The notes: generated by a model from the sequence alone, not told the origin. DNA of 37,261 nucleotides from Cyanophora paradoxa CCMP329 (GCA_004431415.1 QPMI01000506.1:1-37261), one strand, 5' to 3'. Positions 12,913-34,634 are shown, numbered from the stretch's first letter. Made by a program: numbers and translations.

Positions 12913-13350
12913 GCGCGGGCACCGCCAGCGCGGCCGTGCCGCAGCGATGCGCCGGCGTATACAGGGGGCGATCGCGAGGCTCGTGGACAGATATCGATGC
13001 CAGTGCCCCGCCCCGGCCCCCGGCCGGCGCCGTCGGCCCCTCATTATTCATTTTCTAGCCCCTGCTACCGGAAGGCTAACCATAATCTGTACGTGGAGCT
13101 TTGTGTTTCAAGCTTGAAGTTTATCCGCCGTTTTGTATTCTTAGGTTAATCAAATTAAAGACTCTGAAATCGAAGCTATGCCAGCTTGTAATAAAGCCAC
13201 ATGTACAAATGAAACATACTATAGATAATCATGAATTGATCATGAATAAGCTTATAATTAGCGCCGCAAGTTACTAGTATACGTAGCGGCTGGCCATTGC
13301 GCGCGCCGCGGCGGCCGCGCGCGCGGCGCGCGCCTGGCCCCATATATATG

Positions 13351-15124: not shown

Positions 15125-15427
15125 GTGCGTCTTCTAGATCTGCCGATTCATATATATGTGCTCCTGTACATAACTATATATATAGGGTTGCCGTGTCCGT
15201 TTCCCTCTCATGCTTAACCGCTTGCGACCTCTGCTGCATATACATGTGCATCATTTCGAAGCCGTTCGCGCATGTATATATATATATATATATGCATATG
15301 CATGCGATCGCGATCGCGAGCGCCAGCGCTAGCTGCAGCTATAGCTAGCGCTAGCGCTGCATGCATATGCGCACCTGCATATATATGCATATGCATATTT
15401 TTTCGCGCGATCGATCATTAGCTCGGC

Positions 15428-15503
15428 TATCAGGGACTAACGTGTGCAACCCCCCCCCCCGGTATACGTCAATTCAAACTCGGCGGCAAATTTTTGAACA
15501 TGG
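15428..15503 (+). repeat. Left terminal inverted repeat (degenerate)
   Basis: TATCAGGGactaacGTGTGCAaCCCCCCC..TCAATTC..CGGcGGcaaaTtTTTGaAcATGG aligns with the reverse complement of 34468-34536 (TGTCAGGGccttgGTGTGCACCCCCCC..TCAATTC.CGGaGGgATTGTTGtAtATGG). Confidence 0.8.
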
Positions 15504-18500: not shown

Positions 18501-18554
18501 CTCGACCTGGAGGCCGCAAAGGAGAAGGCGCAGCAGGAGAAGGGGCAGCAGTAG
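15500..18554 (+). CDS. Cargo gene A: large orphan multi-exon protein with a Cys/His-rich C-terminal region
   Basis: About 10 GT-AG introns. The junctions checked splice in frame (YYTAM|DDQPE...SSGR|GSGGPTI|PEGFDPLGK...). Contains 'VCDWLGYKCYQGPCFGVCRQGSKDFCHC' and NLS-like 'PKRGRR', 'RKRAR'. Confidence 0.8.
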
Positions 18555-18965
18555 TTGCTCTGAAGTAGCTGCTAGCTCTGCACAGCAGTAGCTGCAGATA
18601 GCCTGTGCTCTTGGTAGGATTTTATTTTCCTTCATGTCCATTCCGAGCTCTCCCGCTGGGCTCGCAACTCTATATATGTATCCATGTGTTTGCTATCTAT
18701 AGTAATGTGCTGTCTATCGCTGTGTATGTATCTATGTCGGCTGTTTATCGCTGTGTATGTATTTGTGTGCAATCTGGATTGATTTCGTATGTGTGCCTGC
18801 GCTCTCCTCTCTGCGTGCCTGGCCATGCATGCATCCCTTCAAGGTTCCCTTCCCAAGTTGACAACAACATCTCGTGTTCAGAGCACGACTCAGCGACACG
18901 TTCACAGAGCTTCACGCGGAACAGGAAGCGCCGCGGGAGGGGAGCGACCCCCGCACGGCTAGCGC

Positions 18966-19571
18966 CTAGCGCCAGCAGTTGCGGCAGCGAGCGCCCTCCT
19001 TGTTGTACTTGGGGTCCGAGGCCCGGAGCGCCTCCTCCGAGCTGAACTCGGGCCAGAGGATCTTCCCCTTCATCTGCGCGCACCGCCTTTAGCTACTGAG
19101 TGCCTCAAAGCCGGGGCACGCGAGCTGTACGCACGCGGAGGGCCGGGCACGTCGGGTTCTGGCCCGAGACCTTGGAGACCTTGTGGATCTTGCCCGTCGA
19201 CGGACTCCCGGTGTACTTCTCGTTCGGTGGAGGAGGAGATGCGTTGCGCCGAGCTTGCGCGCGGCGGGCTGCGGGGGGCGCAGGGCGCTGACCTAGCTCG
19301 GCGCGGATGGCGGTTCAAAACGAGGACGCGCCACGGGCGACGGCGGCCGCGTACCTTCCTCGACTTCCGTCTTTATCGTGCGCACCTCCACCGTGAGCGC
19401 CTCCAGCTGCCGCTGGAGGTCGGCGATGAGCTCGCGTTCGGAGGGAGCGGCGCCCGCAGCGGACGCCGGCTCGGGGGCTGCTGCAGGCCGCCGGAAAGTG
19501 AACTCCTTGCCGCGAAGCGGCCCGGACTCAAAGACGCCGGCCGCGGCAGGTGCCGGGTTGCGCGAGTCCAT
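18966..19571 (-). CDS. Cargo gene C: short coiled coil plus Ada metal-binding-like Zn domain
   Basis: Three exons in frame: MDSRN...LIADLQRQLEALTVEVRTIKTEVEE|GQR...YTGSPSTGKIHKVSKVSGQNPTCPALR|MKGKILWPEFSSEEALRASDPKYNKEGARCRNCWR*. Confidence 0.65.
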
Positions 19572-19575
19572 GGGT

Positions 19576-19591
19576 TTGACGGCGTCGTCAA
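19576..19591. promoter_or_regulatory. Palindromic TTGACG-N4-CGTCAA motif in the 43-bp gap between divergent genes C and B
   Basis: Same motif at 34094-34109, with one-mismatch copies at 22039-22054 and 31319-31334. Confidence 0.55.
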
Positions 19592-19614
19592 GCCAGGGGG
19601 TACGCGTCGTTACC

Positions 19615-21593
19615 ATGCTCCCGGCTGCGGCCGCCGGTGCTCCTGCGCCGCCCGTGGCGGCTGTCGCGGCCGCGCAGTTTGAGCAGCCGGGTGAGCAGCT
19701 CCCCGACCTCATCGTAACAGCCGTGAAGGATATATCGAAGCACGGCGAGAACACCGTGTCACTGGCACCGGCGAAACTAGATGCTTTCATCGCCGAAGTG
19801 GCGGCGATCTTCGACGTTCCCGAATTCGCACGGCCCTTGCTCAAACTCTACGTGGTGCTCTGCGGCGCTGGCCACTGGGTGCCCAACCAGCAGGTCGGCA
19901 GTTCGCCGCCCGTCGATGCTCGCCTGCTTCTGAATGCGCGCAGATATTCGACAAGCACATCCGGCAGGGAAATCTATACTACTTCATCAGCACCAACCCC
20001 TGCGATGTGCCGAAGCTGCTCGCGGAGCAGGCGAAGTCGGCGGAGCAGCTGCACCACAGGCAGCGCGGGCGGGGCATCGGCGCCACGTCCAAGCCAAAGC
20101 GAACCCCGCAGCAGGTTCGGCCCGCGCAGACAGGCGCGCGCGGCATGTTCACTGCTGAACAAAATCGAGCAGCACACAGACCAACTCAACTTGCAGTGGA
20201 TCCAGAAGACCGTGGGCCAGCGGAAACTCTTCCTGGCAACCAAAAAACCAAGCTCTTGCTGGGGAGCGCGACGAAGTTCGTCGCCGAGAAAGCCACGAAA
20301 TGTGCCCAGCAGAGGACGAAGGCTTCCTTGTCCCTCGCCGCAGATCTGTGAGCATTCTGATGGTGAACCCCGTCTGCGCTCCGCTGACTCGTATCTGCAG
20401 GCTTTCGTGTGCCGAGATGTGCAAGCGGGAAGCCGGGGACGTTGTGTTTCCTGACGATAAGATGAACGATATGGAGAGTCTCATGAGCAAGCACGTGGTT
20501 GAGAAACAGCCGATTTCTCTGGCCGAAGCTAAACCGTTCATCGTATTCCTGGTGAATCAACAGTTCAAATCCGAGACTAAATTGCGTGCTCTCTTTATGG
20601 AGAATCTCAAAACCTCCCACAACATCGACAGCGTGGTTTGTGTCCTTCCCTTCACTCTCCTGCCCGCATCCTGATCACGGCTCACAGAAGGCAATTGCCG
20701 GGCTGGAGAGCAGGAGAATGCATCGGACGAGCCAGGGCACGTTTGTGCTTGCGCGTACTAAATTCCGTCGGGTCCGGCTGCAGCTCACGGGTCAGCAGAT
20801 GAGGAGGAGGAGGAGGAAGAGGAGGCTCGTCGCCGCACTCCAGAGGAGCGGGCCCTCCTTCTCAATGCCATGGCGGACAAAGCGTTGGCTGGAGCAGGGC
20901 GGGGCCCTTCCCCGCCTCCTGCCCTGCCTCCTGCCCCGCCTGCTGCTATACCTCCACCCCCCCCTGTGGATCTTCAGAAGGAGGAGGAGGGGGGGGGGGA
21001 AGAGGAGGACGAGGACGAGGACGAGGATGTGGCTCCTGACGGCGTCGAGGCCGATGATGGCACGTGTGAACCCGAAAGACTCCCGTCTGTATCCTAACTT
21101 TCTTCAGAATCGAAGCGATCGAAGGCGGGGGGCAGCAGCAAGGGCCCCAAGGAGAAGAGCACAGGAAGGAAGAAAAGACGAATCACGTGCGTGTAGCCCT
21201 TCCCTTCAATTGTGTGTTCTTTTACACGTGAATGATCGAAATCGCAGCGAGACCGATGAGATCCCGCTGCCTGAAATTCGGGTTGTAGACCAGGCCGGAA
21301 GGAAGAACGTTGTGGACGTTCATTTCCAGATTCCAGCAGGCGTGTGCAAGTTGGAGGAGAAGCAGAGGCATGCAGTCATTTGGAAGCGGGTTCTGGAGAA
21401 CGGGCGCAACACGATTCCACTCAAGCTCGACATGTCGACCAGGATGTGGAAAGAGAAAAAAGCCTTCAACAAGGAAGGAATACAGGTGTGGTCAGCAATA
21501 GTCGAAAGCAACGGCAATGGTGGCCTCGCCATAGTCAAAAAAAGCAAGAACAGCCGGGTCTTAGACACTAACAATCCAGATGCTAAACCCTAG
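19615..21593 (+). CDS. Cargo gene B: orphan multi-exon protein with acidic/Pro-rich linker
   Basis: Coding exons 'QLPDLIVTAVKDISKHGENTVSL...GHWVPNQQ|IFDKHIRQGNLYYF', 'AKPFIVFLVNQQFKSETKLRALF', poly-E/P tracts, and final exon '...VVDVHFQIP...GIQVWSAIV...NPDAKP*'. Confidence 0.7.
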
Positions 21594-21679
21594 CATGTTT
21601 CTTCAGTGCAATGCTTTCTTGTCCTTTCGTAACCACGCGTCCGGGGGTTGAGGGTGTGCAATCATCTCTGTACTCTGTA

Positions 21680-22345
21680 CTCGTGAACATCCAGAGAAAG
21701 AACTACCTTGACCAGAGACTGCAGCTAGCCGAGATGCGAGCAGCTCCAGAGAAAGAACTACCTTGACCAGAGACTGCCTAGCTATAGCCATATGCCTAGC
21801 TGCAGCTCGCGTGAGTGTCCATATGCCTAGCTGCAACTGCGGGACGAGCGCAAGGACTCGATGGGCGCACGGGGCTCAAGAAGAGGGGGAAGCGCGGCCG
21901 ATGCAGACGCGCTTGCGTGCCACGGTGCGCGCTTTCGCCACGCAGCCGTGGGCCCTTCCGCGACTCCGGTGATCGTAATGCTCCCGTCAGGCTTGCCGGA
22001 GGGCGTGCCAAAGCCGCAGCGGGACGCCACCTGCGGTATTGACGCCATCGTAAATGGCCCGTGCGGCGCCGCGGGCGGTGCACGGGCGCTGCGCCGGCGA
22101 TGGGATCGCAGTCTGTGTGCGTACCGTAGGCGGATGCGAGCCTCGGGCGTGCCTATTCGCAGCCCGCCGCGAGGAACAGGTGGTGTTGCCAACTGGCACG
22201 CCCGAGCGAGGCGGCGCGGGATGGGGCTGGGCGGCGCCCAGGTCACTGGCGGCTCGCTCGCGCCGAGCTCGCTGCAGGAGCGCTCGGCGGGCTCCGGGAT
22301 GGCTGAGTCCGGTGTACCGGGAGGTGTTGGGTACGCAGCGAAATG
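21680..22345 (+). repeat. Internal long repeat, copy 1 (leader ending at the ATG of the truncated transposase)
   Basis: Colinear with the reverse complement of 31036-31647. Includes small internal duplications (CCAGAGAAAGAACTACCTTGACCAGAGACTGC twice, 21691-21777). Confidence 0.9.
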
Positions 22346-23117
22346 GCCGCGGGTGGCGCGAGCCCGGCCCAGCCAAGCAGCATCGAGGAGGAGACTCTGC
22401 GCGGCTACGTGGACCAGAGGAAGACGGCCGCTGAGATACTGACTCTGCTAGCCGAGCAGCACGGCATCAACCTCAACAGGCGCGCTCTGCGCTCCAGGCT
22501 CCGCGAGCTTGGCCTCTCAACGAACTACGCTCTCTCTTTCAATGTCCTTTGTGTCGCCGTGCTGGAGGTTGTTAACTTAAATGGCCCCCTTTTCGGCGGC
22601 GGCATGATCCGCACGGCCCTCCGCGCCCAAGGCATCACAGCGTCGAAGTCGAGGATTCGGAAGGCCCTCGCGGTGTTCGATCCGGTGTGGCGCGAGGTCC
22701 GCGGGATCCGCGCGATCCTCCGCGAGCGAGGAATCAAAGCGTCGGAGTCATGGATTCAGCGCGTCGCCAGCGCCGCGGCCATGAAGATAGAGTGCGATCT
22801 GCCATGCTGCACTAGTATATCCCCAGTCTATCCCAATCTGGCTCACGCGTGCCTTGCCGCGGTGTGCAGGTCACACATGCCCGTGCCCTACAACCCAGCT
22901 GTGCAGGGCCGGAAGGAGCTCCGCGATCGCTTCGTCAACTACGCCCGCGCGCGCCCCCGATACAACGGGTCCGCGCCGCTGCAATGCGTTCCGCTGTTCC
23001 GCTGAGGCGCTGCTTGCTCACAGGTACTTCGCATTTGCCTACGGCTGGACCCTCGGTCCCGACCAGCCCGAGAAAATCTACAGACCTATAGATATGTACA
23101 GGTCAATGATGGAGTAG
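22343..23117 (+). pseudogene. Truncated paralog of the IS3EU-like transposase (HTH regions plus first catalytic-Asp strand only)
   Basis: 'IEEETLRGYVDQRKTAAEILTLLAEQHGINLNRRALRSRLRELGLSTNYALS...MIRTALRAQGITASKSRIRKALAVFDP' aligns with the gene at 33961, and 'GWTLGPDQPEK' matches 'GWSVGFDQNEK'. No second D or E motif found downstream. Confidence 0.75.
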
Positions 23118-23351
23118 GTGACTCGTGTGCATGTGCCCTTCGCATCCTTCACTTTGCACGTTCCTTGCTTGTGCCCTTTCATTTGTGTACAATTATTCTT
23201 TAAGCAGCTACTTTTGCTCCTTTGACACGCTGCACAAGCCACAGGGGCCGCCGGGCAAGAAAGGCAATCAATATGGACTTAAAAGCATCTGAACAGAAAA
23301 ACAATGAAGCCTGAGGGGATCTCTCGGAGTTGAAGCCCTACAAAGATCTCA

Positions 23352-24214
23352 TTAAGGGCGTGCATCCAGCATCACACCGATGTAGTCGCAACCCGCTCTG
23401 TAGGCCATGATGTCCTTGAGATCTGCATCGGGCACATTTATCAGCAAAGGCGCGGCACGTCTAGGCGCAGCAAATGGAATGACCACGCACTGTCCTTCGT
23501 GCGCACCCGCACTCCAATTCGTCGCGCATCCTCTTGCCAAGGATCTGCGAGCAGAACTAAGGCACGTGGCATCGCACTGCGAGCTCCGAGCATCGTACTG
23601 CGAAGATCGAGCTCGCCTCCTCGACCTCACGGATTCGGGCGTTCGCATCGGCCCGCGCCTTCTCAGACTTGCTCAGCTCCTCTTTCACCTCGCGGTACCT
23701 GTCGCATACGTCCTGCCGCAGAGCTGAGGCATGCTGAGCGGCCGCATGCGCATCGCACGCGCACCTTTGTCAGTCCCAGATCGACCTCACGGATTCGGGC
23801 GTTCGCATCGGCCAGCGCCTTCTGAGACTTGCTCAGCTCCTCTTTCACCTCGCGGTACCTGTCGCATACGTCCTGCCGCAGAGCTGAGGCATGCTGAGCG
23901 GCCGCATGCGCATCGCACGCGCACCTTTGTCAGTCCCAGAATCTGCGGTCCGACGAATTCGTTCGCTCTCTCCCTGGCCTCCATCTCGGCCACCTTTCGG
24001 TGCAAAGTGTCCACCTCCGCTTGCTTATCGGCAAGCCTCTCGTTGAGGTGCTGTGGGAATTCCGAAGTTCATCAGATAGCTGGTGGCGCCCGCTACCGTC
24101 GCGCGGACCACAAAGGCAACGCACATTCAGACTGTGCTCGACGATCGTCATGACTTTCTCGTTGCAGCAAGGCCGCTCCACTTGCGTGCTGCTGTCCACC
24201 GACGCTCCCGCCAT
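23352..24214 (-). CDS. Cargo gene D: coiled-coil protein with a duplicated exon; 3' part related to gene A
   Basis: 'HLNERLADKQAEVDTLHRKVAEMEARE', two copies of 'DVCDRYREVKEELSKS.KA.ADANARIREV', then 'DLKDIMAYRAGCDYIGVML'. The 3' end is uncertain. Confidence 0.55.
23621..23940. repeat. 160-bp tandem duplication (52-nt intron + 108-nt exon)
   Basis: 23621-23780 and 23781-23940 differ at only two positions seen. Confidence 0.95.
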
Positions 24215-24295
24215 CGTCTTGGGGTAGTGTGAACCCCCGAGCGGCATTCCGCGGCAGAACGCGTTCTTTGAACGTTCGCGACAATCCGCGTCATC

Positions 24296-25587
24296 CGCGG
24301 CAACCGCGGCATTTTGAGTCTATCCGCGGCAACTCCGCGGCAGTTACGTGAGAATTAATTAACCACGAAATTAAAAAAGGGGGGTAGTCCAAATGACGCG
24401 GCATCTTCGCGGCATTCCGCGCTACTAACAAATTCTGCGGCAATTACCGGTAGATGTCGTTAAATCCGGCAGTTGGCGACAGAACGCGGCATCCAAGGCG
24501 TCGTCGCGCTGCTTTCGCGGCTCTCGCCCGAGAATTAATTAACCACGAAATTAAAAAGTGGGGTAGTGTGATTGACGCGGTGTTTCCGCGGCACTCCGCG
24601 CTACTAGCGGCAATTAGCGGTTCTCGCGAGGTTTGTCGGCATTTTGCGGCTCTACAGAACCGCGGCGTCGCTTCGTATGTCCCGATGAGGCGCAGATCAT
24701 GAGCTTCATGATCATGACGCGCGTTTCCTCCGCATCATGATGCAGGCATGTTCAGAGGAACTATATAAGTATTTTAATCATGCTTAGAACGTGTGCGCTT
24801 TTTCCACAGACCACCCTAGCTTCAGTGCTTTATGGCAATTCATGAATTGTCAGTCTGACAGTTCATCCTGTACTTTTCTGTTCGACACATGTGTCTGTGG
24901 TCTGCATGCACAATCCGCCTCCTCCTAAACATGATTAAAATATTTATAGAGTACCTCTGGACATGCAGGCATCATGACGCGGGAGAAAACGCGCCTCATG
25001 ATCATGAAGCTCACGATCCGCGCCAGATGGCAAGCCAGAATTGACGCCGCGATTCGTATTTGCCGCGAACAACCGCAATGTACCGCGATTGTCAAATCAT
25101 GCCGCGGTTAGGGAAAACTGCCGCGAAGTTGCCGCGTTATTTGGACTACCCCCCTTTTTTATTTCGTGGTTAATTAATTCTTGGGAAACCGTCGCGTAGA
25201 AAACGCGATTCCATCGCGGATGCCGCATTTTGACGCTAACTACCGAATTTGACGACGTGTGGCAGTAATTGCCGCTAGTAGCGCGGAGTGCCGCGGAAAC
25301 ACCGCGTCAATCACACTACCCCCACTTTTTAATTTCGTGGTTAATTAATTCTCGGGCGAGAGCCGCGAAAGCAGCGCGACGACGCCTTGGATGCCGCGTT
25401 CTGTCGCCAACTGCCGGATTTAACGACATCTACCGGTAATTGCCGCAGAATTTGTTAGTAGCGCGGAATGCCGCGAAGATGCCGCGTCATTTGGACTACC
25501 CCCCTTTTTTAATTTCGTGGTTAATTAATTCTCACGTAACTGCCGCGGAGTTGCCGCGGATAGACTCAAAATGCCGCGGTTGCCGCG
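24296..25587. repeat. 1.3-kb palindrome/foldback built from ~180-bp units
   Basis: 24296-24616 is a near-perfect inverted copy of 25266-25587. Inner imperfect arms at ~24690-24812 and ~24893-25023. The core GAATTAATTAACCACGAAAT(T)AAAAA..GGGGTAGT occurs 5 times. Confidence 0.95.
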
Positions 25588-25852
25588 ACACGTCGCGCGC
25601 TCACTCGCGTCACATTTCTTCCCATCCCATCAAGAGCCGCGCTCTTTCTTTTGCCATCGCATCCCGCTTCGACGCACAGTGCATGCGGTGTCGCGTTGGC
25701 GCGTGCGCAGCCGCAGGCCAGTCTGCCATCCCAGAGCTAGCTGCTGGCATGAGAGAGACTGGGTTCATTTGGATGGGAGAAGAAACAGAACCGGAAAAGA
25801 GAGAAAAGGAGGTCTACAACGCCAGGATAGCGCGTGAGATACGAGAAGAGAG

Positions 25853-26767
25853 CTAGCGAGCCAGCACGCTCCAGTACAGCTGCCCGTACGGGACGAAGAT
25901 CTCCATCCCTGCTTGAGGACGCAGTCGGCGACTAGCCAGACCTGCCCGTCCTTCTCCACGCGGAAGAAGGCGTTGTTCGAGAAGCGGGGTGAGTCCCGGG
26001 CTTATCCGCGTCATTTGCGAAGCGCGCTAGGCTCGCCTCCGGAAAGTCGGTGGCGTCGAGGACGTACGTGTGCCCGTACTTGCCTTTGAACGAGATGCTG
26101 TAGAGGCGACGCGAGGGCTCGCGAGCGAAAATCTCCAGCGCTTGAGTCTTCGTGTAGATCGTCCCGCGGTACGGGGTGATGAGGTCACCTGGTCTGAAAA
26201 CAACTGCACCACGGCGCACGCCCGGCCGCTCCACGAAGAGGCCGGTCCCGGCGCGCCAGATGCCCGACTGCTTCGGCAGAAGCCAGCCCGCGCGGCGATC
26301 GATGCCGATGGCAGCGGTGGTGCGCGGCAGACGGCCTCGCCGCGGGGTCTGCGGCAAACTTTACTCGCAGCGATACTGGCGGCACGAGCGGCAGTCGAAC
26401 GAGCGCACGCTCACACCACGCGTCCTTGCCGTTACCTGCCGGCAGCGAGTGCAGCTGGCAGTTAGCGCACAGGCGACCCACTGGCGGCGCAGCGCACTCA
26501 GCGCACATACCAGTTCAGTACCTCCGGCCGAAGCGAGACGACGCAGCTGCCTATACATTTTGCTTCGGAACTGCCCACCAGCTCGAGATCCCAGCGCTGG
26601 GGCTTCGGTACCGGTACCCCCTGCCGGAGCACCCGCCGTCCCGTTCTCCTGCTGTGAGCTCAACGGCAAGGCTTCTGCTCAGCTCCTACCGCGGTGCTAG
26701 CCCTCTTGTGCTAAATCACGCCCGCACGCCCCGCGCAATCTTCGGGAATTCCCGCGCTGACGCCCAT
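25853..26767 (-). CDS. SET-domain lysine methyltransferase (compact, virus-like architecture)
   Basis: 'KQSGIWRAGTGLF...FRPGDLITPYRG...YVLDATD...SLARFANDA...NNAFF...VWLVA...LKQGMEIFVPYGQLYW'. Two single-base losses in C/G runs must be restored. The 5' exon structure is uncertain. Confidence 0.88.
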
Positions 26768-26812
26768 TTGGGCAGCCGTCAATACACATAGGCGGCCTTC
26801 GGCACGGCAGAC

Positions 26813-28808
26813 ATGTCAGCGCCGGCCGAGGAACGGAAGCGGAGGCCGCGTACAGACGCGCAGACAAGCGAGCCGGGCGCGGGAAAGGCCGCGCGCAGGA
26901 ATCGTGCTGCCCGGATGCCGGCGGCCAACCGAGCTGGGGGCTAGCCAACGGCTTTTACGATCTGGATCCCGATACAGGATTGCCCGTCGGCGTGCGGCAC
27001 CTGGAGCAGACATGCATGATCCTCGGCGTGAAGGACACGTTCAGCAAGCAGGTGTACGATCCCTTGACGGGGCAGCAAGTCAAGCGCAACACCCAGCTTT
27101 ACACAGATAGCTCGAAGCGTGTCGTTCACGTCTGCGAGATCTGCAGGATCCTCCTTTGGATCGGGGCTATCGCTGGCCGCGCGTGCGCCCGCCGCGGTAA
27201 CTCGTGCGCGGTGTTCGCTGACTCTGCCTGCAGGTGTGCTATCTCGGAATCGGTGTATTATGGGGAAAACGGAGTATGCGGGCCTCCTGTGATCACGCAT
27301 ATGCACACATGCGTGCAAATGCTCGCGCAAGTGCAAGCCGTTTACATGCACGTGTACAAGGACGCACCACGCGAGACGCTGAGAGATTTCCTGGTCGGCT
27401 CGCTGCCGACGCCTTCAAGAAGGATCCGCCGCTGCGCCTGGCCGCAGCGCTCGTTGCTGTCCTCCCGCTGCAGCCCCCCGCGGCAGATGCCGCGGCAGAT
27501 GGGGTTGTTTCCCCCCCGCTCCTCCTCCTTTGCCGCACCTCCTCCCCGCCTCTCCTTTGCCCTCCCCGCCTCTCCCTTTGCCCCTCCCTCCGCCTCTCCC
27601 TTCGCCCTCCCCCGCCTCCTTCCGTTCCTCCCCAGCCCTCCTGCCACCCCTCCTGCCTCCACTCCCCGTCCCCGCCCGCCTGCCGTCGCCGTCTCGCCCT
27701 TTCTCGGAGGATTAGGCCTGCCCGAGCAGCAGCTCTACGCTCTGTGGGCATGTCGATTCCTGTGGTCGACGTCGAGATCGAAAATCCTACACCGGCCACA
27801 ACCGATAGGAATGAATGGGATGAAGGGGAGGAATGCATAGCTTCCGACCAGAAGCCGGGTATGCTGCAGAATGCACAGTTGATGGCAATTGACTGACAGT
27901 TCCATGCCAGGTCGTCAGGAACTGAAGCCGATGAAGATCAGCGACGCCAAGAAACCAGTACGAGAGTATGTGCGGAATGTCATTGATGACTTGGCGATGA
28001 TCCCGAAGACGGCAAGATTCCACTTACTACCTCTCAAGTGCAGACAGGTAAACGTACAGTTCTTCGTTCTGTCTCAGATCAATGGTTTTGACCGACTTCT
28101 TCCGTGTGTGTCTGTGCCTCAGGCATCTATCTTCTCATGCTTGTCAGCAGTCAATGGAGAAACCCGCTGTGGCATGTGGAGAGCCCGTGCCCTTCGGCCT
28201 CCTCGACAACACGGCCTACATTCATCTGCTGGTCGACTTAGCTCGACAGGGCAAGCATGTGCTCTTTTGCTTCAACACAAATCACAGGACACCCACAGGG
28301 CGTGAGGTTGGACACTGGTGTGCCGTGCAGACTGCTTCCGTAGATCGATGTCTGATGCAACACACAGGATTCTCGGCTACCTCGCAAAGAAGGACGTCAG
28401 ACTGTCTGCACCTTCGCCGATTCAATGAATTGGACGAAAACATTGGGTAAGGTTGCAGATATGCTCCACTCCCATAGAGTAAGTGTGCTGGGAACATCTA
28501 CGACCACGCTGTTCAGTTTAATTGCGTCGATGTGAGTTCTTTTCTAGAGTATCTGTATTGTCTTTCTGATGCACTTTGCTCCAGTGCGGTGTGTGGATCT
28601 GGGCTGCTGTGTACACGCTCATGTTCCCACATGTAGCGATAGCCAGCTCAACGTGCAGGCTGCTCTCCGCTCACAGCTGCTCACAAGTAAACCAGATGGA
28701 AGTGCGAATGAGTGCTGGATCAGGCAGTGGAGGGAACGGATCCGCAAGCTAGCTCTTGTAGTTTGTGACCCTGCCCGGGATGACGAGGATCTCAAGCTTG
28801 AGCCCTGA
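26813..28808 (+). CDS. Ulp1/SENP-type (clan CE, C48-like) cysteine protease with N-terminal Cys/His region
   Basis: 'HVLFCFNTNH...VGHW' (His at 28313), 'TFADSMNW' (Asp at 28419), 'AVQFNCVD|CGVWIW' (Cys at 28585, after an intron), C-terminal 'IRQWRERIRKL'. Confidence 0.8.
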
Positions 28809-28854
28809 ATCAAAATATTTACATTGTGCGCACAGATGCATACAAAGCCTGCGA

Positions 28855-31038
28855 TTATCTTCTCATGCTCGCTACGGCACGTTCTACAGTGCGCTGCCTG
28901 TGCTGGGCAATCTTCGCGAGGGCGCGCCTGGCGTTGTTTCGCCTCGCGCACTCTCTTTGTGCCGACAGTGGGGGCGGCGCTGACGCGCGCTGCTGTGAGC
29001 CGCTTCCGCTGTTCCACGCCTCCTTCTGCTTCAGCTGCTCTTCGTTCTCTTCGTTCTCTGACTCCTGCTCCTCCTCTTCCGCTCCTGCTCCTCCTCTCCT
29101 CTTCCTCCTCCTCTTCCTCCTCCTCTTCCTCCTGCTCTCCTGTGCACGCCGCGTTGCTTGCCGCCGCTCATCCTTTGCACGCCGCATCGCTTGCCGCCGC
29201 TCCTCCTTCCTCTCTCTTCTTCTCCTTGACTCCGAGCACTCAAGGCCTAAAAGGCATGTGTTAGGAATGCGATGCATGAACATCCAGTATCCAGAGGCAC
29301 GCACAGTACCACTTGCCCTCGGGTATGGTGGCATCCGAAAAACCAGCACATTCGACGTGCCACGCCCTGCCGCACGCCTCCCATCGCAGATGAGGAGTTC
29401 GCCATTCAGAGAGGGATCATCCTCCGATCCGGCCAAATGGCATTTCTGGCAGCAGCAGGCGAGGCCTACACAAAACGTTAGCGAGGTCTTGAATCGCGAA
29501 TGTAATGCAAAGGACACACAGAGATATTCCATCATTTTGAATCCATTCTCGACCACGAAGTTCACACATTCAGGGTGGTAGGCGTTCATGCATCTCTCCC
29601 TGACGTGCTTTCGCTTGATGCACGCCTCTTCCGACCGCCGCAGCCGCCCGGCTCGTGCTGGCAGATGGATTCCTTGTTGTGGCAGCACAAGTAGGGGTGG
29701 CTGTGGTAGTTGGGAAGTTTTCGCCGCAGACGAGGCAACGATAAGTCATCGCCGTCCAGGCTGCCTGCGGTAGTCTGGAGGGGGAGAGGGGTGCTTGAGA
29801 CTGAGAACCTGCGCCCGCATCTACTGCCTCCGCAATGATTAAAGCCTCCGTTGCCTGAAGGCGACGTCATCGTGGAAGTGCTGGTTGCACTCCTTGAACT
29901 CAGCCTCGGAGATGGTCTTCACTCTCTCACCGCTGAGCCTTGCCACAGTGCGGATATCCATGCGACTGTAAAGAGATCAGAAAGGGTACTGTCACAGGGG
30001 GTGGGTGGGGGGGGGCGGATTAGTATGTACCACTCAGGACAGGACGCCTCCCGTGCTTCAGCAGGTCCATGATGCAGGATTCATGGAACTTGTGGGAACA
30101 GATCTTCCCTCGCTGTCGGCCACCGTCACAGGGAGCCCTCTCTCAGGATCCTGGACTGAGCTCAAACAGACTGAGCAGGTTGCATTGATCCCGATCAGAA
30201 GATCAACAGCCTCTTGTCCTCCTTCGAAATTGATGCACGTGCTCTGCACGTTCACGACTGTCAGCAAAAACATCTGCTATGCAGCAGCATCTGCAGACCT
30301 CAGCTCCTGTATAGCGCCTCGGACAAGTCCATAGCCGCCATCTCGGCTAACTCCTCCTCCGTGGGGGGCAGAGAACTTCTTCAGCAGGAGCGGGCGTGGG
30401 CGGCACAGGATCGACCTAGGGGCGCCGCACGACTGTAAGAGATTGGTACAACTGTTGTGCAGCAGCAGAGCACGCACTCGACTGGAACGAAGAACAGGAA
30501 CACGGGCACACGGCCAGGCACATCCGGCGACGCAGCCGGCGCGGGTGGCGCCGCTCCTCAGCCTTGTTTTCAGTTAGCTCTGATTCATTCCTGTACAGGT
30601 ATCATCAGCGCGGATGGCGACGGATCGCGGGCAACGCACGTCGCAGTGACCGTTGCACTAAGGGCGATCGGCTCCGGCGACGGGCGAGGGGGAGTGCGGA
30701 GCGCAATCGTGCACGTCAACGGTCGCTTTCTGAGGCGGGCTGCAGCTGATGGCGGTGGCTGGCGCTGGCTGCTGGCTGGCGTCGACGTCTTGGTCGGCGG
30801 GCTGCGCAGCGAACAGCTGTCTGCAGGTGCTGTCCTCAACAGCTGTCTTAGCTATGAGGTCCTCGGGTGGCGCCGGCGGCTGCGGCTTCGGTCCTTCAAA
30901 GCCGCCGTTTGCCCAGTCAGCAATCGCTTCCGCGTGACGGTACTTGATCCAGTGGTTACGCTCGGCTATATAGCTTTCACGGCGCGCCTTTTGGGGTGTG
31001 TTGAGCTGCGCCGGCGAGGCCAGACGCGGCGTGCGCAT
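28855..31038 (-). CDS. RING-H2 + tandem PHD finger protein (putative chromatin-reading E3 ubiquitin ligase)
   Basis: RING 'CSVCL...KICSHKFHESCIMDLLKHGEASCPEC|R' at ~30177-29965. PHD-like 'CLVCGE...CMNAYHPEC'. Canonical PHD 'CQKC...ELLICDGEACGRAWHVECAGFSDATIPEGKWY|CLEC' at ~29455-29235. Charged tail. Several 1-bp homopolymer frameshifts. Confidence 0.85.
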
Positions 31039-31647
31039 TTTCGATGTGTACCCAATTCTCCGGGTACACGGACTCAGCCATCCGGAGCCCGCCGAGCGCT
31101 CCTGCAGCGAGCTCGGCGCGAGCGAGCCGCCAGTGACCTGGGCGCCGCCCAGCCCGCCCCGCGCGCCTCGCTCGGCGTGCCAGTTGGCAACACCACCTGT
31201 TCCTCGCGCGGGCTGCGAATAGGCACGCCCGAGGCTCGCATCCGCCTACGGTACACACACAGACTGCGATCCCATCGCCGGCGCAGCGCCGTGCACCGCC
31301 GCGGCGCCGCACGGGCCATTTACGATGGCGTCAATACGCAGGTGGCGTCCCGCTGCGGCTTCGGCGCGCGCTCCGGCAAGCCTGGCGGGAGCATTACGAT
31401 CGCCGGAGTCGCGGAAGGCCCACGGCTGCGTGGCGAAAGCGCGCACGCAAGCGCGTCTGCATCGGCCGCGCTTCCCCTCTTCTTGAGCCCCGTGCGCCCC
31501 ATCGAGTCCTTGCGCTCGTCCCGCACCTGCAGGCATTTGGAAACTCACTCGAGCTGCAGGTATTGTCGGGAGCTGCTCGCATCTAGGCTGGCTGCAGCCG
31601 AGGTGAAGCTTGAAGGTAGTTCTGTCTCTGGATGTTCATCCCGAGCT
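31036..31647 (-). repeat. Internal long repeat, copy 2 (leader ending at the ATG of the RING-PHD gene)
   Basis: Inverted homologue of 21680-22345. Similarity stops at the start codon in both copies. Confidence 0.9.
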
Positions 31648-31791
31648 CTAGGCCTAGGTCAATGTCACTTTGCTGTATGTGGATGTTTCCATTTCCTTTC
31701 CCGCCCAGTGCGAGCAGGAGAGAGCGTTTCATTAGACATAGCCAGAGCTAGCTATATCAAGCTAGGGCTAGAGGGCCGCTAGAGGGCTAGC

Positions 31792-33961
31792 CTAGCGGGC
31801 CGGGGGCGCGCACGAGGGGATCGAAATTGTGCACATAATAAAGAAAGCTGCACGCATTTCCTGGGGCTCCAGCAGGTACTCGTCCGGTGGGAAGAAGCCA
31901 TCCCTGCATTGACCGGGCACGGGGCGCGTCGTTGTTGGCGGTGCGTCGTGCACCACTGCATCCAGCCGGGATGGACACATCGTACAGGTGCAGGTCGGAA
32001 AGCTGCTCGTTCAGCTGCAGCATGAACAAGAAGAGCCGGGGGAGCCCTCCAAGGGGGTTGCTGGAGTACTGCTCCGCAATGCGTCCACGTACCCCGGAGC
32101 TTCCTCATCATACTCCCGCCGAAGTTGACCACATGCTTCCAGATCTCCTTCAAGTCCTCATTGCATTCCTTGAACATCTCGTCCCGCAGCATCCTGAGCG
32201 TGAGGAAGCTTGATAAACAATGAAGGGAGTGCCGGGGCAGGTAATTTCACACCGGAGAGTCGTGCGGGGTTCGTCAAAGACGACGAAGTCGGCTCAACGG
32301 GTCCTTCATGCGGCTGTCAAGGACCGAGCCGTTGACAGAGCCGCCCTCTGGTTGTGGATATCCTTCATTTCCGTCCACTCTGGCAGGTTGAACATCAGAG
32401 GCCGCATGTAGTTCATGTTCTCGCGCCTGCACCCGGGCCCAGTGAGCTGGGACAGCACAATTTAAAGAACAGGGAACAGGTGCCGCAGTGCATACCACCA
32501 GTCTGGCCTGCCGTTCTGCCCCCCGTCTCCTTGGAGCCTGAATTCACGTGGTGGTTCAGCTGTTCTTCGCGATGGCGAGGCCGTACTCCATCACGTACAT
32601 GGTCGCCTTCGCCATGGCAAACAGCTGTTGAGGTCGAGTCTGAATGCAAGCGGAGAATAATAAGCATGCATGCCAAGTGAATTCGAATGCACGCATGCAA
32701 ATTAAGAGCTCTTAATTTGGCAAGTCTCAGCAGAAGTAACTGATTGTAGCCTTCCAACATGTACATAGGATGGCCATCATGGTCTGTAGCTGTCATCGAC
32801 TGGCGGGTCGCACGAAGGGCACCTGTTGTACCACTCGAGCATCTCCAGCATCACAGCCGCATCCACGATGGGCTTCGTGACCTTGACATTCACCCACCTG
32901 CCATGGAGTGTTACCGGAGAGAGCAAATACAGAAGGAATGCGTGGGGGAGAGGGCGTGTCCATCACCTCAATTCTTCTCGACCTTCGGGTTCGGTAGGAT
33001 GGGCCACCATGACGGCGTCGCGCAGGTCGTTGGGATCTTCGAAGTTGAGCCTCCGCCAGGGAAGGCCGGTGGTGGGGTCCGTGATGTTGCCCTTCGCAAT
33101 TTCCTCGTCGATCAGCCGCTCGTTTCCTCCAGCACGAGCGCCTTTCGGTGGCCGCGCCCGGGGTCAGGTGCGGCGCAGGTGAGCAAGAGGAGTGGGAGGG
33201 AGCACACGTGGGCTGTCCAGGTCAGCCGGTTCTCTGCGCCGCAGTCCGAGGAGACCGTGTCGAAGACCCCGAACTCCTCACGACCGACCTGCAGCTCTGG
33301 GGTCACGGAGCACGCAGCTGCGAGGCGTGTGCCCCTCGCGCGCACTTGTACAGTTTGTAGCCTTGTATAGTGGAGCGAGCAAGCCCGCAATGCAGTCCAG
33401 GATGAATGTGGACGTATTCTCCACGGCCGCGAAGATGTAGACGTTCGTGTACGGCACCGCCTTCTCGTTCTGGTCGAAACCGACACTCCAGCCGAAGAAC
33501 TTCCTGCGCACAAGGCGTGCGTCAGCGCGGCGCGGCGGTGCGGCACGGGCGGCGTGGCGGCGCGGACCCGTAGAAGGTCGAGCGGTGGATGGACCTGCGC
33601 TTTTTCGCGAACTCGCCCAGGCGAACGTTGCGTCCCGTCGGATCCAGCTCCGCGAGGGCGTGCTGAATCCTAGACTTCGCCACAGTGATGCCCGCGGCCC
33701 TGAGCGCCCGCGGATCGCGTCGTAGCCGTATCCGTCGCCGCACAAAGTCGCCGCTTCTTCTACGACATCGTAAACTGCCTCCTTTGAGAGAGAGTAGTCC
33801 GTCGAGAGGTCGAGGTCGCTGAGCTTGTAGCGCAGGGCGCGCATCGAAATCTGGATTTGGTGCTCCTCGTGCAGCAGAGCCACGATCTCCCTCGCCTTTC
33901 TCTTCTGAGCCACATACTCCTCCAGAATCTCCGGGTCGATGTAAATCTCGAAGCCGCTCAT
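31792..33961 (-). CDS. IS3EU-like DDE transposase (integrase-core family), multi-exon
   Basis: N-terminal HTH-like 'ISMRALRYKLSDLDL', 'GYGYDAI.RALRAAGITVAKSRIQHALAELDP'. Catalytic core D 'WSVGFDQNEK...YIFAAVENTSTFIL', D 'FGVFDTVSSDCGAEN', E 'PSY.NPKVEKN(W)', then 'KNS(W)NHH'. These parallel the family pattern WHxDG..K / xxDxGxEN / SxxNxxIERxW / WNxH. The 3' end is approximate. Confidence 0.85.
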
Positions 33962-34093
33962 TGCGAGGCGAACCGCAATGAGCGCCCGCAGCTCCGTGCA
34001 CTAGGCTATCGCTGTTTTGGCCGCTGGGGCGGCTCTCCGGCGGTCTGCGCCGGCTGTTCCCGCGGTCGAAAAATTCACTGCACCCCCCCTCCC

Positions 34094-34109
34094 TTGACGC
34101 TGTCGTCAA
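34094..34109. promoter_or_regulatory. TTGACG-N4-CGTCAA motif about 130 bp upstream of the transposase ATG
   Basis: Exact match to the motif at 19576-19591. Confidence 0.55.
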
Positions 34110-34467
34110 AACCGAGTGCTGGGCCGCGTCGGGCGCGCGCAGCATCTTCAGCGACCTAGCATCGCATCCGTGGTAGGTTTGAGCGCTGCCGCATGCATCT
34201 GAGTGCCCGAGCTGGCGCCCGCACGCTCGACGGGCGCGCGTCCAGGGCAGCGCGCGCGCAGCCCGCCCGGCCACACGAACCACTTGTATGTATGATACAA
34301 AGACCTCTTACGCTACTAGCTCGCCGGCGCCGCGCCCGGGCTCCTGTTCACTATGCCAGGATCGGCTGCCAGGGACTGCCTGCCTGGCCGCTGCCATGCC
34401 CGGTGCATGTGCTACGTATTTGTTCCACCAAGGAGCGCCCGCTCGCCGCCCCTGCCTTGCACCATGA

Positions 34468-34536
34468 CCATATACAACAATCCCTCCGGGAATTGAAGCA
34501 AATGCTCCTGGGGGGGTGCACACCAAGGCCCTGACA
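34468..34536 (-). repeat. Right terminal inverted repeat (degenerate), followed by TSD CTCGGC at 34537-34542
   Basis: Ends ...GGGGGGGTGCACACCAAGGCCCTGACA|CTCGGC and matches the left TIR in blocks. Confidence 0.8.
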
Positions 34537-34634
34537 CTCGGCGGCTTTCGCGCAATCTTTTATATGAAATAAGATCCTAATTATAAGCTCGAATCTTGAC
34601 CCCGTAGCTGGTCGCGCCGCGCCCCCGCGCGCAG

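What the first reader, a model, noticed from the sequence alone, without database searches (positions are those of the whole stretch)
25853..31038. Contiguous chromatin/ubiquitin toolkit: SET writer, SUMO-type protease and RING-PHD reader-ligase
Seen: three adjacent genes (SET divergent from Ulp1, Ulp1 convergent with RING-PHD-PHD) separated by ~45 bp. Known: histone lysine methylation, SUMOylation and ubiquitin ligases are core to TE silencing, and Ulp1 capture alone is known in Mutator- and Zisupton-type elements. Inference: a transposon-encoded anti-silencing or self-chromatin-programming module. I know no DDE transposon with all three.
Basis: partly seen in the sequence, partly recalled or inferred. 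Interest (0 to 1): 0.88.

Follow-up and report, generated by a model that had tools for sequence, protein, structure and literature searches.

The report
Transposon carrying three chromatin-type genes
A 19-kb cut-and-paste transposon in the alga Cyanophora paradoxa carries three intact, spliced and transcribed genes (a small virus-like SET methyltransferase, a probable Ulp1-type protease and a RING plus PHD finger protein); this could let the element tamper with host chromatin control, but that function is untested.

Summary
The window is Cyanophora paradoxa. Its apparent frameshifts are PacBio homopolymer deletions: independent DNA and RNA contigs insert the missing bases. RNA contigs from three studies show all three genes spliced at short GT-AG introns.

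- **Gene A** is a 190-aa stand-alone SET protein. This rests on profile hits, an AlphaFold model and Foldseek matches. Its nearest relative (40% identity) lies on a giant-virus contig. The family has Asp where the canonical NHS motif has His.
- **Gene B** ends in a probable Ulp1/C48 protease. The support is a His-Asp-Gln-Cys motif and protein-language-model neighbours; no HMM matched.
- **Gene C** has a RING-H2 and two PHD fingers. It could only be tested in pieces, which gave sub-threshold Pfam hits.

All three sit inside a 19,109-bp IS3EU/GingerRoot-like transposon (imperfect inverted ends, perfect 6-bp target duplication), present in roughly six near-identical copies.

The anti-silencing function is inference only. 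SET and Ulp1 cargo are each known in other DNA transposons, and I found no report of this trio. This scan also noted, on other DNA of the same genome, a different transposon with fused DOT1-Ulp1-SET cargo. I rate it a new variant of a known kind.

The parts
25853..26558 (-). Gene A: 190-aa stand-alone SET-domain protein. CDS exons 26558-26508, 26432-26409 and 26348-25853. Introns 26433-26507 and 26349-26408. The 3' UTR reaches at least 25755.
   Evidence: Spliced RNA contigs in X15, X17 and X19. The public EukProt model P0002 is the same protein. Pfam SET E = 2.1e-4. 61 of 62 homologues hit Pfam SET. Family profile against PDB: KMT2D/EZH2, E = 3e-19. AlphaFold pLDDT 82; Foldseek matches SET8, MLL1 and SET7/9.
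26559..26812 (.). Head-to-head region between the start codons of genes A and B. The 5' ends of the two transcripts overlap. It includes the 5'-UTR intron of gene B (26693-26774).
   Evidence: One RNA contig (X15 record 1) runs from gene A into gene B with the introns of both strands removed. Sequence.
26813..28808 (+). Gene B: about 580-aa protein. It has a Cys/His-rich N-terminal region of unknown kind, a Pro-rich linker and a C-terminal Ulp1/C48-like protease core (about 27910-28750). Introns: 27183-27233, 27858-27909, 28045-28119, 28318-28367 and 28532-28584.
   Evidence: Splice joints in three RNA runs. Intron 28318-28367 was refined from the sequence. The EukProt model P0005, from another copy, has GHW..FADS..VQFNCVDCG, that is His, Asp, Gln and Cys in C48 order. 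ESM Atlas: 21 of 30 nearest clusters are Peptidase_C48, score 0.94, 183 shared features. Pfam, NCBIfam and PDB sequence searches found nothing. The single-sequence AlphaFold model was unusable.
28809..28854 (.). 46-bp gap between the stop codons of the convergent genes B and C. The 3' UTRs overlap.
   Evidence: Stops. Gene B RNA contigs run on to 29054, inside the gene C coding region.
28855..31038 (-). Gene C: about 600-aa protein with a RING-H2 (about 29950-30180), a first PHD-like finger (about 29530-29760), a second canonical PHD finger (about 29230-29460) and a Lys/Arg/Glu-rich tail. Introns: 30590-30638, 30416-30476, 30244-30298, 29966-30030, 29465-29518 and 29246-29303.
   Evidence: Splice joints in three RNA runs, refined. 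Pfam on pieces: zf-RING_2 E = 5e-4, PHD E = 1.7e-3 and 0.019, NSD PHD1 E = 6.7e-4. The ligand patterns CSVC..CSHKFHESC..CPEC and CCQKC..CDGC..H..C..CLEC can be read across one assembly indel or a splice site. No full-length model was obtained.
15428..34536 (.). The host element: a 19,109-bp IS3EU/GingerRoot-like DNA transposon. Its ends read TATCAGGG... and ...CCCTGACA. They form an imperfect terminal inverted repeat of about 27 nt. The target-site duplication CTCGGC lies at 15422-15427 and 34537-34542.
   Evidence: A 6-bp duplication and TA/TG..CA termini are the published marks of IS3EU/GingerRoot (PMC10045372). Element GC is 60% against 75% in the left flank.
31700..34000 (-). Putative transposase gene, fragmented here by introns and assembly errors. 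It has an N-terminal helix-turn-helix and the start of an integrase-type DDE core. The 3' limit is approximate.
   Evidence: Clr5/HTH hit, E = 1.5e-3. IS3-like 'GYGYDAIRG..LRAAGITVAKSRIQ' and 'GFDQNEK..' segments. ESM Atlas neighbours are integrase-core PF24764/rve clusters, score 0.88, 174 shared features. No Pfam rve hit.
31039..31597 (.). Upstream region of gene C. It is one arm of a roughly 560-bp inverted duplication, about 95% identical. The other arm (about 21780-22342) ends at the ATG of a transposase-like helix-turn-helix gene (22343-23005, plus strand).
   Evidence: Each arm carries one copy of the near-palindromic TTGACG-N4-CGTCAA motif.

Best explanation
**What it is (shown).** The three genes are functional-looking cargo of a young, multi-copy IS3EU/GingerRoot-type cut-and-paste transposon of Cyanophora paradoxa. 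Each gene is intact, has its own short introns and is transcribed in laboratory cultures. They encode:
- a minimal SET-domain lysine methyltransferase of a small, stand-alone subfamily whose nearest members sit on giant-virus contigs;
- a protein ending in a CE-clan (Ulp1/SENP-like) cysteine protease;
- a RING-H2 E3-type protein with two PHD fingers.

**How it most likely works (inferred).** The products act in the nucleus, on histones or on SUMO- or ubiquitin-marked chromatin regulators. The PHD fingers would dock the RING ligase on histone H3 tails. The protease would strip a ubiquitin-like modifier from silencing or repair factors. The SET protein would write a lysine mark. The net effect would keep the element's chromatin permissive, or otherwise favour its transposition.

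I put 'real, expressed transposon cargo with these domains' at about 0.9. I put 'the module counteracts or reprograms chromatin-based control of the element' at about 0.4. The figure given is for the two together.
For: **Intactness and expression**
- One DNA contig set and RNA contigs from three studies make the same corrections to the window, and the RNA contigs are spliced at canonical sites.
- The errors look like PacBio errors: the 12 listed are nearly all missing bases, mostly beside short C or G runs, against only three substitutions. The genome paper describes PacBio RSII, Canu and Quiver (PMC6704402).

**Domain identities**
- SET. P0002 keeps every invariant residue of its family (N137, N151, E175, Y180), so it has been under constraint since it diverged from relatives at 40% identity or less.
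- Protease: catalytic His, Asp, Gln and Cys in order, with Gln to Cys spacing of 6 as in yeast Ulp1 (the Ulp1 figure is from my own knowledge). C48 neighbours in the ESM Atlas.
- RING and PHD: and the ligand patterns.

**Transposon**
- Inverted ends and a perfect 6-bp target duplication.
- Integrase-type transposase lead.

**Copy number**
- Contig word depth of 307-316, against 44-56 for unrelated contigs in the same DNA run (a rough guide only).
- SET gene models on four different assembly contigs.
- The SET and gene B neighbours are repeated on contig tig00000113 as g5682 and g5681.

**Precedent**
- Transposons are known to carry epigenetic modifiers: SET in HarbingerS and MuDR, TET/JBP in IS3EU and others, and VANC in VANDAL (PMC12730594).
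- In Cyanophora, 5mC is enriched on young transposons (PMC12344493), so there is a silencing system to counter.
Against: - No activity, substrate or phenotype is known.
- The SET family has Asp where canonical enzymes have the His of NHS. In SUV39H1, loss of that His abolishes activity (my own knowledge), so catalysis must be shown.
- The protease has no HMM or structural confirmation, and the model used (P0005) comes from another error-prone copy.
- Gene C was never seen as one protein.
- The copies are almost identical, so selection within the family cannot be measured.
- Expression of cargo does not show that it benefits the element.
- The best-studied small viral SET (PBCV-1 vSET, my own knowledge) represses transcription. 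That is the opposite of anti-silencing.
Confidence: 0.5

Rival explanations
1. The cargo serves the mechanics of transposition rather than chromatin control. SUMO or ubiquitin handling by the protease and the RING ligase would manage the DNA-damage response at excision and insertion sites, or the stability of the transposase. The PHD fingers would steer insertion to particular chromatin.
For: Ulp1 or OTU protease domains are fused directly to Ginger1 transposases, once together with a PHD finger. The authors proposed a role in transposition or repair (PMC2836005). Gene C and a transposase-like helix-turn-helix gene share a duplicated 560-bp upstream region, which suggests co-regulation with the transposition machinery.
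Against: This gives no role to a histone-type SET enzyme. Here the genes are separate from the transposase, not fused to it. No direct evidence exists either way.
Confidence: 0.2
2. The genes are passengers. They were picked up recently, at least the SET gene from a giant virus or a virus-like source. They ride along and are transcribed, but give the element no advantage.
For: The nearest SET relative (40% identity, E = 4e-20) is on a contig with an NCLDV major capsid gene. Two further relatives lie beside Pox_A32 ATPase genes. Foldseek against viral models returns giant-virus SET proteins. The element's GC (60%) is below the genome mean of 67.6% (PMC6704402). TET/JBP cargo moves passively between transposon families (PMC12730594).
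Against: All three open reading frames and their catalytic or ligand residues are intact, and each has host-type introns. Three chromatin/ubiquitin-type genes side by side is hard to credit as a random pick-up. The tree support for a virus-specific grouping is weak (SH-aLRT 88), and the family also has a bacterial member.
Confidence: 0.15
3. The genes are decayed captures or pseudogenes unique to this copy.
For: The raw window shows many frame breaks. Pfam finds nothing on the raw open reading frames.
Against: Wherever the RNA contigs cover a listed break, they and the DNA contig make the same correction; breaks in introns are corrected by the DNA contig. The pattern is the signature of a sequencing error. 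Other copies break at other places. Spliced transcripts exist in three studies.
Confidence: 0.03
4. This is not transposon cargo. It is an ordinary host gene cluster inside a segmental duplication.
For: The DDE core of the transposase was not confirmed by an HMM in this copy.
Against: The element has precise inverted ends with a perfect 6-bp duplication. Depth is about six times that of the comparison contigs. Gene models lie on four contigs. Other windows report units of the same length, 19.1-19.2 kb (leads only).
Confidence: 0.04

Closest known systems
SET-carrying DNA transposons (HarbingerS; MuDR families of Phytophthora), as cited in PMC12730594
   Same: A DDE transposon carries its own SET-domain histone-methyltransferase-type gene, read as a counter-measure to silencing.
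   Different: The transposon superfamily differs (IS3EU/GingerRoot-like). The SET here is a 190-aa stand-alone protein of a virus- and bacteria-type subfamily with NDA in place of NHS. It comes with two further chromatin/ubiquitin-type genes. I could not compare sequences with the Repbase entries.
Ulp1-bearing transposons: Mutator-like KI-MULEs, and Ginger1 (Ulp1 with or without PHD fused to the transposase), PMC2836005
   Same: A C48-type protease, and in one Ginger1 family a PHD finger, travel with a DDE transposase.
   Different: Here the protease is a separate spliced gene, is too divergent for the Pfam C48 model, and the PHD fingers sit in a third gene together with a RING.
Fungal IS3EU families carrying TET/JBP dioxygenase and alpha-kinase genes (PMC12730594)
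   Same: The same superfamily marks (6-bp target duplication, TA-type termini) and several accessory genes, one of which targets an epigenetic mark.
   Different: The cargo differs (DNA demethylation versus histone and ubiquitin-like modifiers) and the host is a glaucophyte alga. At 19.1 kb with about nine genes, this element is much larger.
Giant-virus SET proteins, with PBCV-1 vSET as the studied example (the vSET properties are from my own knowledge)
   Same: Small stand-alone SET proteins ending in a ..YG..YW motif. The nearest sequence relatives and the best viral fold matches are giant-virus proteins.
   Different: vSET keeps the NHS motif, whereas this subfamily has NDA. The Cyanophora gene has introns and lies in a transposon. 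It lacks the Cys-rich N-terminus seen in several viral relatives.
VANDAL21 VANC anti-silencing protein of Arabidopsis (cited in PMC12730594)
   Same: It shows the principle: a DNA transposon encodes a factor that lifts its own epigenetic silencing.
   Different: VANC is a sequence-specific DNA-binding protein, not an enzyme set. There is no homology.
Another Cyanophora transposon family with a fused DOT1-like, Ulp1-like and AWS-SET-postSET gene
   Same: The same genome and the same theme: a recently multiplied cut-and-paste element carrying SET and Ulp1-like modules.
   Different: In that family the modules are fused in one polypeptide, with a DOT1-like domain and a canonical AWS-SET-postSET. 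Here there are three separate genes, a minimal SET, and a RING-PHD protein.

Membership tests
SET-domain lysine methyltransferases (Pfam PF00856) | Significant profile match over the whole domain | tested here: met
   P0002 alone scores 22.1 bits, E = 2.1e-4, just under the 22.4 cut-off. 61 of 62 phmmer relatives hit SET, best E = 1.8e-15. The family profile hits KMT2D, KMT2C and EZH2 at E = 3e-19.
SET-domain lysine methyltransferases (Pfam PF00856) | SET fold | tested here: met
   AlphaFold model with a 62-sequence alignment: mean pLDDT 82, domain above 90. Foldseek probability 1.00 to SET8, MLL1, MLL3 and SET7/9, target-normalised TM up to 0.73.
SET-domain lysine methyltransferases (Pfam PF00856) | Cofactor-pocket motif (R)F/Y-x-N-H-S/C | tested here: not met
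   The motif reads RFANDA. Asn is kept, His is replaced by Asp, and Ser/Cys by Ala. The same holds across the subfamily (ARYANDA consensus).
SET-domain lysine methyltransferases (Pfam PF00856) | C-terminal catalytic Tyr (E-x-x-x-x-Y-G) | tested here: met
   In EIFVPYG, E175 and Y180 are invariant in the 62-sequence alignment.
SET-domain lysine methyltransferases (Pfam PF00856) | Methyltransferase activity on a lysine substrate | not testable with these tools
   Needs an enzyme assay.
Ulp1/SENP cysteine proteases (MEROPS C48, Pfam PF02902) | Profile match to Peptidase_C48 | tested here: not met
   No Pfam hit at E up to 10 on P0005 or its parts. No hit on window pieces. No PDB or NCBIfam sequence hit. 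P0005 is a gene model from an error-prone copy.
Ulp1/SENP cysteine proteases (MEROPS C48, Pfam PF02902) | Catalytic His, Asp, Gln (oxyanion hole) and Cys in that order, with typical local motifs | tested here: met
   GHW, then FADS 19 residues later, then VQFNCVDCG with Gln to Cys spacing of 6. The window exons give the same motifs.
Ulp1/SENP cysteine proteases (MEROPS C48, Pfam PF02902) | CE-clan fold | tested here: inconclusive
   The single-sequence AlphaFold model has pLDDT 37. Only the order of strands and helices fits. ESM Atlas neighbours are 21 of 30 C48 clusters at 0.94, which is a lead and not a test.
RING-H2 E3 ligases | C3H2C3 zinc-ligand pattern and a profile match | tested here: inconclusive
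   The 40-aa piece scores zf-RING_2 20.7 bits (cut-off 27.3), E = 5e-4, and zf-rbx1 E = 1.9e-3. The full pattern CSVC..C.H..H..C..CPEC appears only when read across one assembly indel and one splice site.
PHD fingers (Pfam PF00628) | C4HC3 pattern and a profile match | tested here: inconclusive
   C-terminal halves: PHD E = 1.7e-3 and NSD PHD1 E = 6.7e-4 for finger 2; PHD E = 0.019 for finger 1. All are below the cut-off because the pieces are halves. Finger 2 has the complete C4HC3 pattern across an indel and a splice site. The N-terminal half of finger 1 is atypical.
IS3EU/GingerRoot DNA transposons | 6-bp target-site duplication | tested here: met
   CTCGGC at 15422-15427 and at 34537-34542. 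Rule from PMC10045372.
IS3EU/GingerRoot DNA transposons | Terminal inverted repeats with TA..TA (or TG..CA) termini | tested here: met
   The left end reads TATCAGGG and the right end, reverse-complemented, reads TGTCAGGG. That is TA at one end and CA at the other. About 21 of 27 positions match.
IS3EU/GingerRoot DNA transposons | IS3/IS481-like DDE (integrase-core) transposase | tested here: inconclusive
   Helix-turn-helix hits only (Clr5 E = 1.5e-3; HTH_21 E = 2.9e-3 on the paralogue), and no rve hit. ESM Atlas neighbours are integrase-core PF24764/rve clusters, 0.88, 174 shared features. No phylogeny with Repbase IS3EU transposases was possible.

The most novel reading that the evidence does not exclude
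A giant IS3EU-type transposon has assembled a three-part chromatin toolkit: a lysine-methyl writer, a ubiquitin-like-modifier eraser, and a histone-reading E3 ligase. At least the writer would be drawn from the giant-virus gene pool. The element would use the toolkit to escape the 5mC and heterochromatin silencing that otherwise marks young transposons in Cyanophora. Together with the DOT1-Ulp1-SET fusion noted on another element of the same genome, this would make glaucophyte transposons the first known carriers of multi-enzyme anti-silencing systems.
Probability: 0.25. Interest if true: 0.85.

Novelty: new variant of a known kind. Interest (0 to 1): 0.62.

Why it matters
Transposons that fight back against host silencing are known from only a few cases: VANC in Arabidopsis, probably TET/JBP in fungi, and SET in some Harbinger and MuDR elements. 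This element is young, multi-copy and transcribed, and it sits in an early-branching alga. It carries three different chromatin or ubiquitin-type genes side by side. That offers a tractable system: three small proteins to express, methylome data on the species already published, and cultures in hand. With it one can ask whether mobile elements deploy combined writer, eraser and reader tools. It also links transposon cargo to the giant-virus SET pool. On the practical side, it shows that the published Cyanophora assembly still carries about 1% indel errors in repeats, and these break its gene models there.

Tried and rejected
**Searches that gave nothing**
- Pfam on raw ORFs of the trio and of the rest of the element found nothing, or only helix-turn-helix hits. 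The pieces are cut by introns and assembly errors.
- Exact look-up of P0002 in contig collections: not on record.
- Word-based search for a gene C model: blank. The tool's length window (163-518 aa) may simply exclude it, so this says nothing.
- phmmer of P0002 and of the protease part against PDB sequences: no meaningful hit.
- NCBIfam: nothing.
- Single-sequence AlphaFold of the protease part: pLDDT 37, unusable, so not sent to a fold search.
- Pattern scans for relatives of the SET and protease parts found none in viral contigs, and a scan for the protease part found none in metagenome contigs.
- tblastn of gene B and C pieces against the 13 fetched contigs that carry SET relatives, mostly virus-like: no co-occurrence of the trio there.

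**Readings considered and dropped**
- A quick maximum-likelihood tree of 62 SET proteins groups the Cyanophora protein with the NCLDV-context protein P0006, but at SH-aLRT 88 only. No direction of transfer is claimed.
- The two '15-nt micro-exons' suggested by the read table are alignment artefacts beside single-base assembly errors.

Gene C was therefore searched in pieces only, by reference. The full-length proteins used (P0002, P0005) are public gene models.

Full report
**Source and sequence quality**

The window comes from Cyanophora paradoxa. The SET exon retrieves a 100% identical public gene model, tig00001049_g6674.t1, in EukProt set EP00741. The genome paper describes a PacBio RSII, Canu and Quiver assembly with a mean intron length of 86 bp (PMC6704402).

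I laid contigs from one DNA run (X5) and three RNA-type runs from three studies (X15, X17, X19) on 25700-31100. This gave 53 small differences. Of the 12 listed, 11 are bases missing from the window, mostly next to short C or G runs, and there are only three substitutions. Ten of the 12 are corrected the same way by all four runs; the two that lie in introns (26454, 27187) are corrected by the DNA contig only. The two breaks inside the SET domain (+C after 25906, +G after 25985) are among the ten. Gene models of other copies break at other places. The 'frameshifts' are therefore assembly errors, not decay.

**Gene structures and expression**

The RNA contigs, but not the DNA contig, skip short stretches bounded by GT..AG on the coding strand.

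| Gene | Strand | Start | Stop | Introns |
|---|---|---|---|---|
| A (SET) | minus | ATG 26558 | 25853-25855 | 26433-26507, 26349-26408 |
| B (Ulp1-like) | plus | ATG 26813 | 28806-28808 | 26693-26774 (5' UTR), 27183-27233, 27858-27909, 28045-28119, 28318-28367, 28532-28584 |
| C (RING, PHD, PHD) | minus | ATG 31038 | 28855-28857 | 30590-30638, 30416-30476, 30244-30298, 29966-30030, 29465-29518, 29246-29303 |

- Two apparent 15-nt micro-exons in the read table are alignment artefacts beside one-base errors.
- A and B are head to head, 254 bp between start codons, and their 5' ends overlap: one RNA contig spans both.
- B and C are tail to tail, 46 bp between stops, and their 3' ends overlap.
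- Contigs cannot give expression levels or strands. They do show spliced RNA of all three genes in three independent studies.

**Gene A is a SET protein**

- The intact public model P0002 (190 aa) equals the exon translations once the two errors are allowed for.
- On its own it scores just under the Pfam SET cut-off: 22.1 against 22.4 bits, E = 2.1e-4, covering profile positions 10-105 of 105.
- An exhaustive phmmer search of 1.84 billion representatives gave 76 hits at E of 1e-3 or better. Most are 130-250-aa stand-alone proteins.
- 61 of 62 aligned members hit Pfam SET, best E = 1.8e-15.
- The family profile hits KMT2D, KMT2C and EZH2 at about 3e-19.
- An AlphaFold model built with that alignment has pLDDT above 90 over the domain. 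It matches SET8, MLL1, MLL3 and SET7/9 and, among viral models, giant-virus SET proteins.
- The family consensus is ..AG.GLFA..ARYANDA..NNA..EIFV.YG..YW. The Cyanophora protein keeps all invariant positions.
- Asp replaces the His of the canonical NHS motif throughout the family, so catalysis has to be demonstrated, not assumed.

**Relatives of the SET gene**

- The nearest relative is P0006 (40% identity, E = 4e-20). It lies on a 14-kb contig together with an NCLDV major capsid gene.
- P0015 and P0081 lie next to Pox_A32-type ATPase genes.
- P0010 is in a clearly bacterial context.
- A quick tree places the Cyanophora protein with P0006, but with SH-aLRT of only 88.
- No Cyanophora protein outside this cluster appeared among the close hits.

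The gene is therefore not a recent copy of a host SET gene. A link to the giant-virus gene pool is a reasonable lead, but neither the link nor a direction of transfer is shown.

**Gene B**

- The model P0005 (tig00000113_g5681, next to SET copy g5682 on another contig) follows the true frame where the window has errors.
- Its C-terminal 150 residues carry GHW, then FADS, then VQFNCVDCG. That is His, Asp, Gln and Cys in the order typical of Ulp1/SENP proteases. The Gln to Cys spacing is 6, as in yeast Ulp1 (the Ulp1 numbering is from my own knowledge).
- In the ESM Atlas, 21 of the 30 nearest clusters are Peptidase_C48, at score 0.94 with 183 shared features.
- Against this, Pfam, NCBIfam and PDB sequence searches found nothing, and the single-sequence fold failed.
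- I call it a probable (about 80%) CE-clan, Ulp1-like protease. Its substrate (SUMO, NEDD8 or ubiquitin) is open.
- Its Cys/His-rich N-terminal region has no match.

**Gene C**

No full-length model could be retrieved (the tool's length window may explain the blank). The evidence from pieces is as follows.

- A 40-aa piece hits zf-RING_2 (E = 5e-4) and RING-H2 models.
- The C-terminal halves of two fingers hit PHD (E = 1.7e-3 and 0.019) and the NSD PHD1 model (E = 6.7e-4).
- Read across one indel and one splice site, the RING is C-x2-C..C-x-H-x2-H-x2-C..C-P-E-C.
- The second finger is a complete C4HC3 PHD ending W-Y-C-L-E-C.
- A Lys/Arg/Glu-rich tail follows.

**The host element**

The element spans 15428-34536 and has imperfect inverted ends of about 27 nt (TATCAGGG... 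and TGTCAGGG...).
- It is flanked by a perfect CTCGGC duplication. A 6-bp duplication and TA or TG..CA termini are the published marks of IS3EU/GingerRoot (PMC10045372).
- The transposase gene lies on the minus strand from about 34000. It has an IS3-like helix-turn-helix and the start of a DDE core. Its Atlas neighbours are integrase-core families, but no Pfam rve hit was obtained from this fragmented copy.
- Copy number is roughly six. The evidence is contig depth of 307-316 against 44-56 (a rough guide), SET models on four contigs, and unchecked notes of other 19.1-19.2-kb copies.
- The DNA contigs are collapsed without branching, so the copies are almost identical. That points to recent spread and rules out a dN/dS test.

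**Mechanism**

Shown: the genes are intact, spliced and transcribed; they are cargo of a young transposon; the SET fold and its family-level constraint are established.

Inferred: the three products act on chromatin or on ubiquitin-like modification of nuclear factors, to the element's benefit. My preferred reading is interference with chromatin-based silencing (about 0.4). Cyanophora methylates young transposons (PMC12344493), and several transposons carry epigenetic modifiers (PMC12730594).

Rivals:
- A role in transposition or repair, as proposed for the Ulp1 and OTU domains of Ginger1 (PMC2836005).
- Neutral passengers of viral origin.
- Pseudogenes or a host gene cluster, both effectively excluded.

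**Comparison and novelty**

SET cargo (HarbingerS, Phytophthora MuDR), Ulp1 with or without PHD (Mutator, Ginger1), and multi-gene IS3EU elements with TET/JBP and a kinase are all published. Full-text searches found no transposon with this trio and nothing on Cyanophora transposon cargo.

This scan has also noted, on other DNA of the same genome, a different transposon family with a fused DOT1-like, Ulp1-like and SET gene (not checked here). Chromatin-enzyme cargo therefore seems to be a recurring theme in this alga. I rate the finding a new variant of a known kind.

Noticed in passing
window 25700-31100 (probably all repeats of this assembly): About 1% residual indel error: 53 differences in 5.4 kb. 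The 12 listed are nearly all missing bases, mostly beside short C or G runs. The public gene models of this element are truncated or mis-spliced as a result. For example, the SET models are 128, 163, 169 and 190 aa long for the same gene.
   Followed up: yes
window 21780-22342 and 31039-31597: A roughly 560-bp inverted duplication, about 95% identical. Each arm ends exactly at a start codon: gene C at 31038 and a helix-turn-helix gene at 22343. It looks like a duplicated promoter and 5' UTR shared by a cargo gene and a transposase-like gene.
   Followed up: partly
window 22343-23005 (+): A second, apparently truncated transposase-like gene with Clr5 (E = 1e-4) and HTH_21 (E = 3e-3) hits and IS3-like helix-turn-helix repeats. 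It lies in inverted orientation to the main transposase gene at the right end.
   Followed up: partly
window 24296-25587: A large palindrome with perfect 268-nt arms (24296-24563 and 25320-25587), built from units of about 170-180 nt. It lies near the middle of the element.
   Followed up: no
window 19576, 22039, 31319, 34094: The palindromic motif TTGACG-N4-CGTCAA occurs four times (two exact, two with one mismatch), against 0.07 expected by chance. None lies between genes A and B.
   Followed up: partly
window 17436-17518 and 23368-23450; 23621-23940: A diverged inverted paralogous segment, 76% identical, that encodes similar peptides (..MAYEANCNYIGV.. and ..MAYRAGCDYIGV..). This suggests a gene duplicated inside the element. 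Nearby is a 160-bp tandem duplication, 98% identical.
   Followed up: no
window 30399 and 30886: In both DNA and RNA runs, other contigs share sequence with gene C up to these points and then continue into unrelated sequence. They may be a variant element or a paralogue that shares part of gene C.
   Followed up: no
window 1-13000 against 15428-34536: The left flank has 75% GC, up to 82% per kb, and is full of GC-rich short repeats. The element has 60% GC, below the genome mean of 67.6%.
   Followed up: partly
L001 9415-9945; P0007, P0008, P0012: Several of the nearest SET relatives, at least two of them from giant-virus contigs, carry an N-terminal Cys-rich motif (..RC..C..GPYCWIH..) that the Cyanophora protein lacks. 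The Cyanophora protein has an Arg-rich, disordered N-terminus instead.
   Followed up: no
window 26508-26692 and 28809-29054: Transcripts of genes A and B overlap at their 5' ends, and those of genes B and C at their 3' ends. These are possible sources of double-stranded RNA, in a species reported to have many exonic small RNAs (PMC3700990, abstract only).
   Followed up: no
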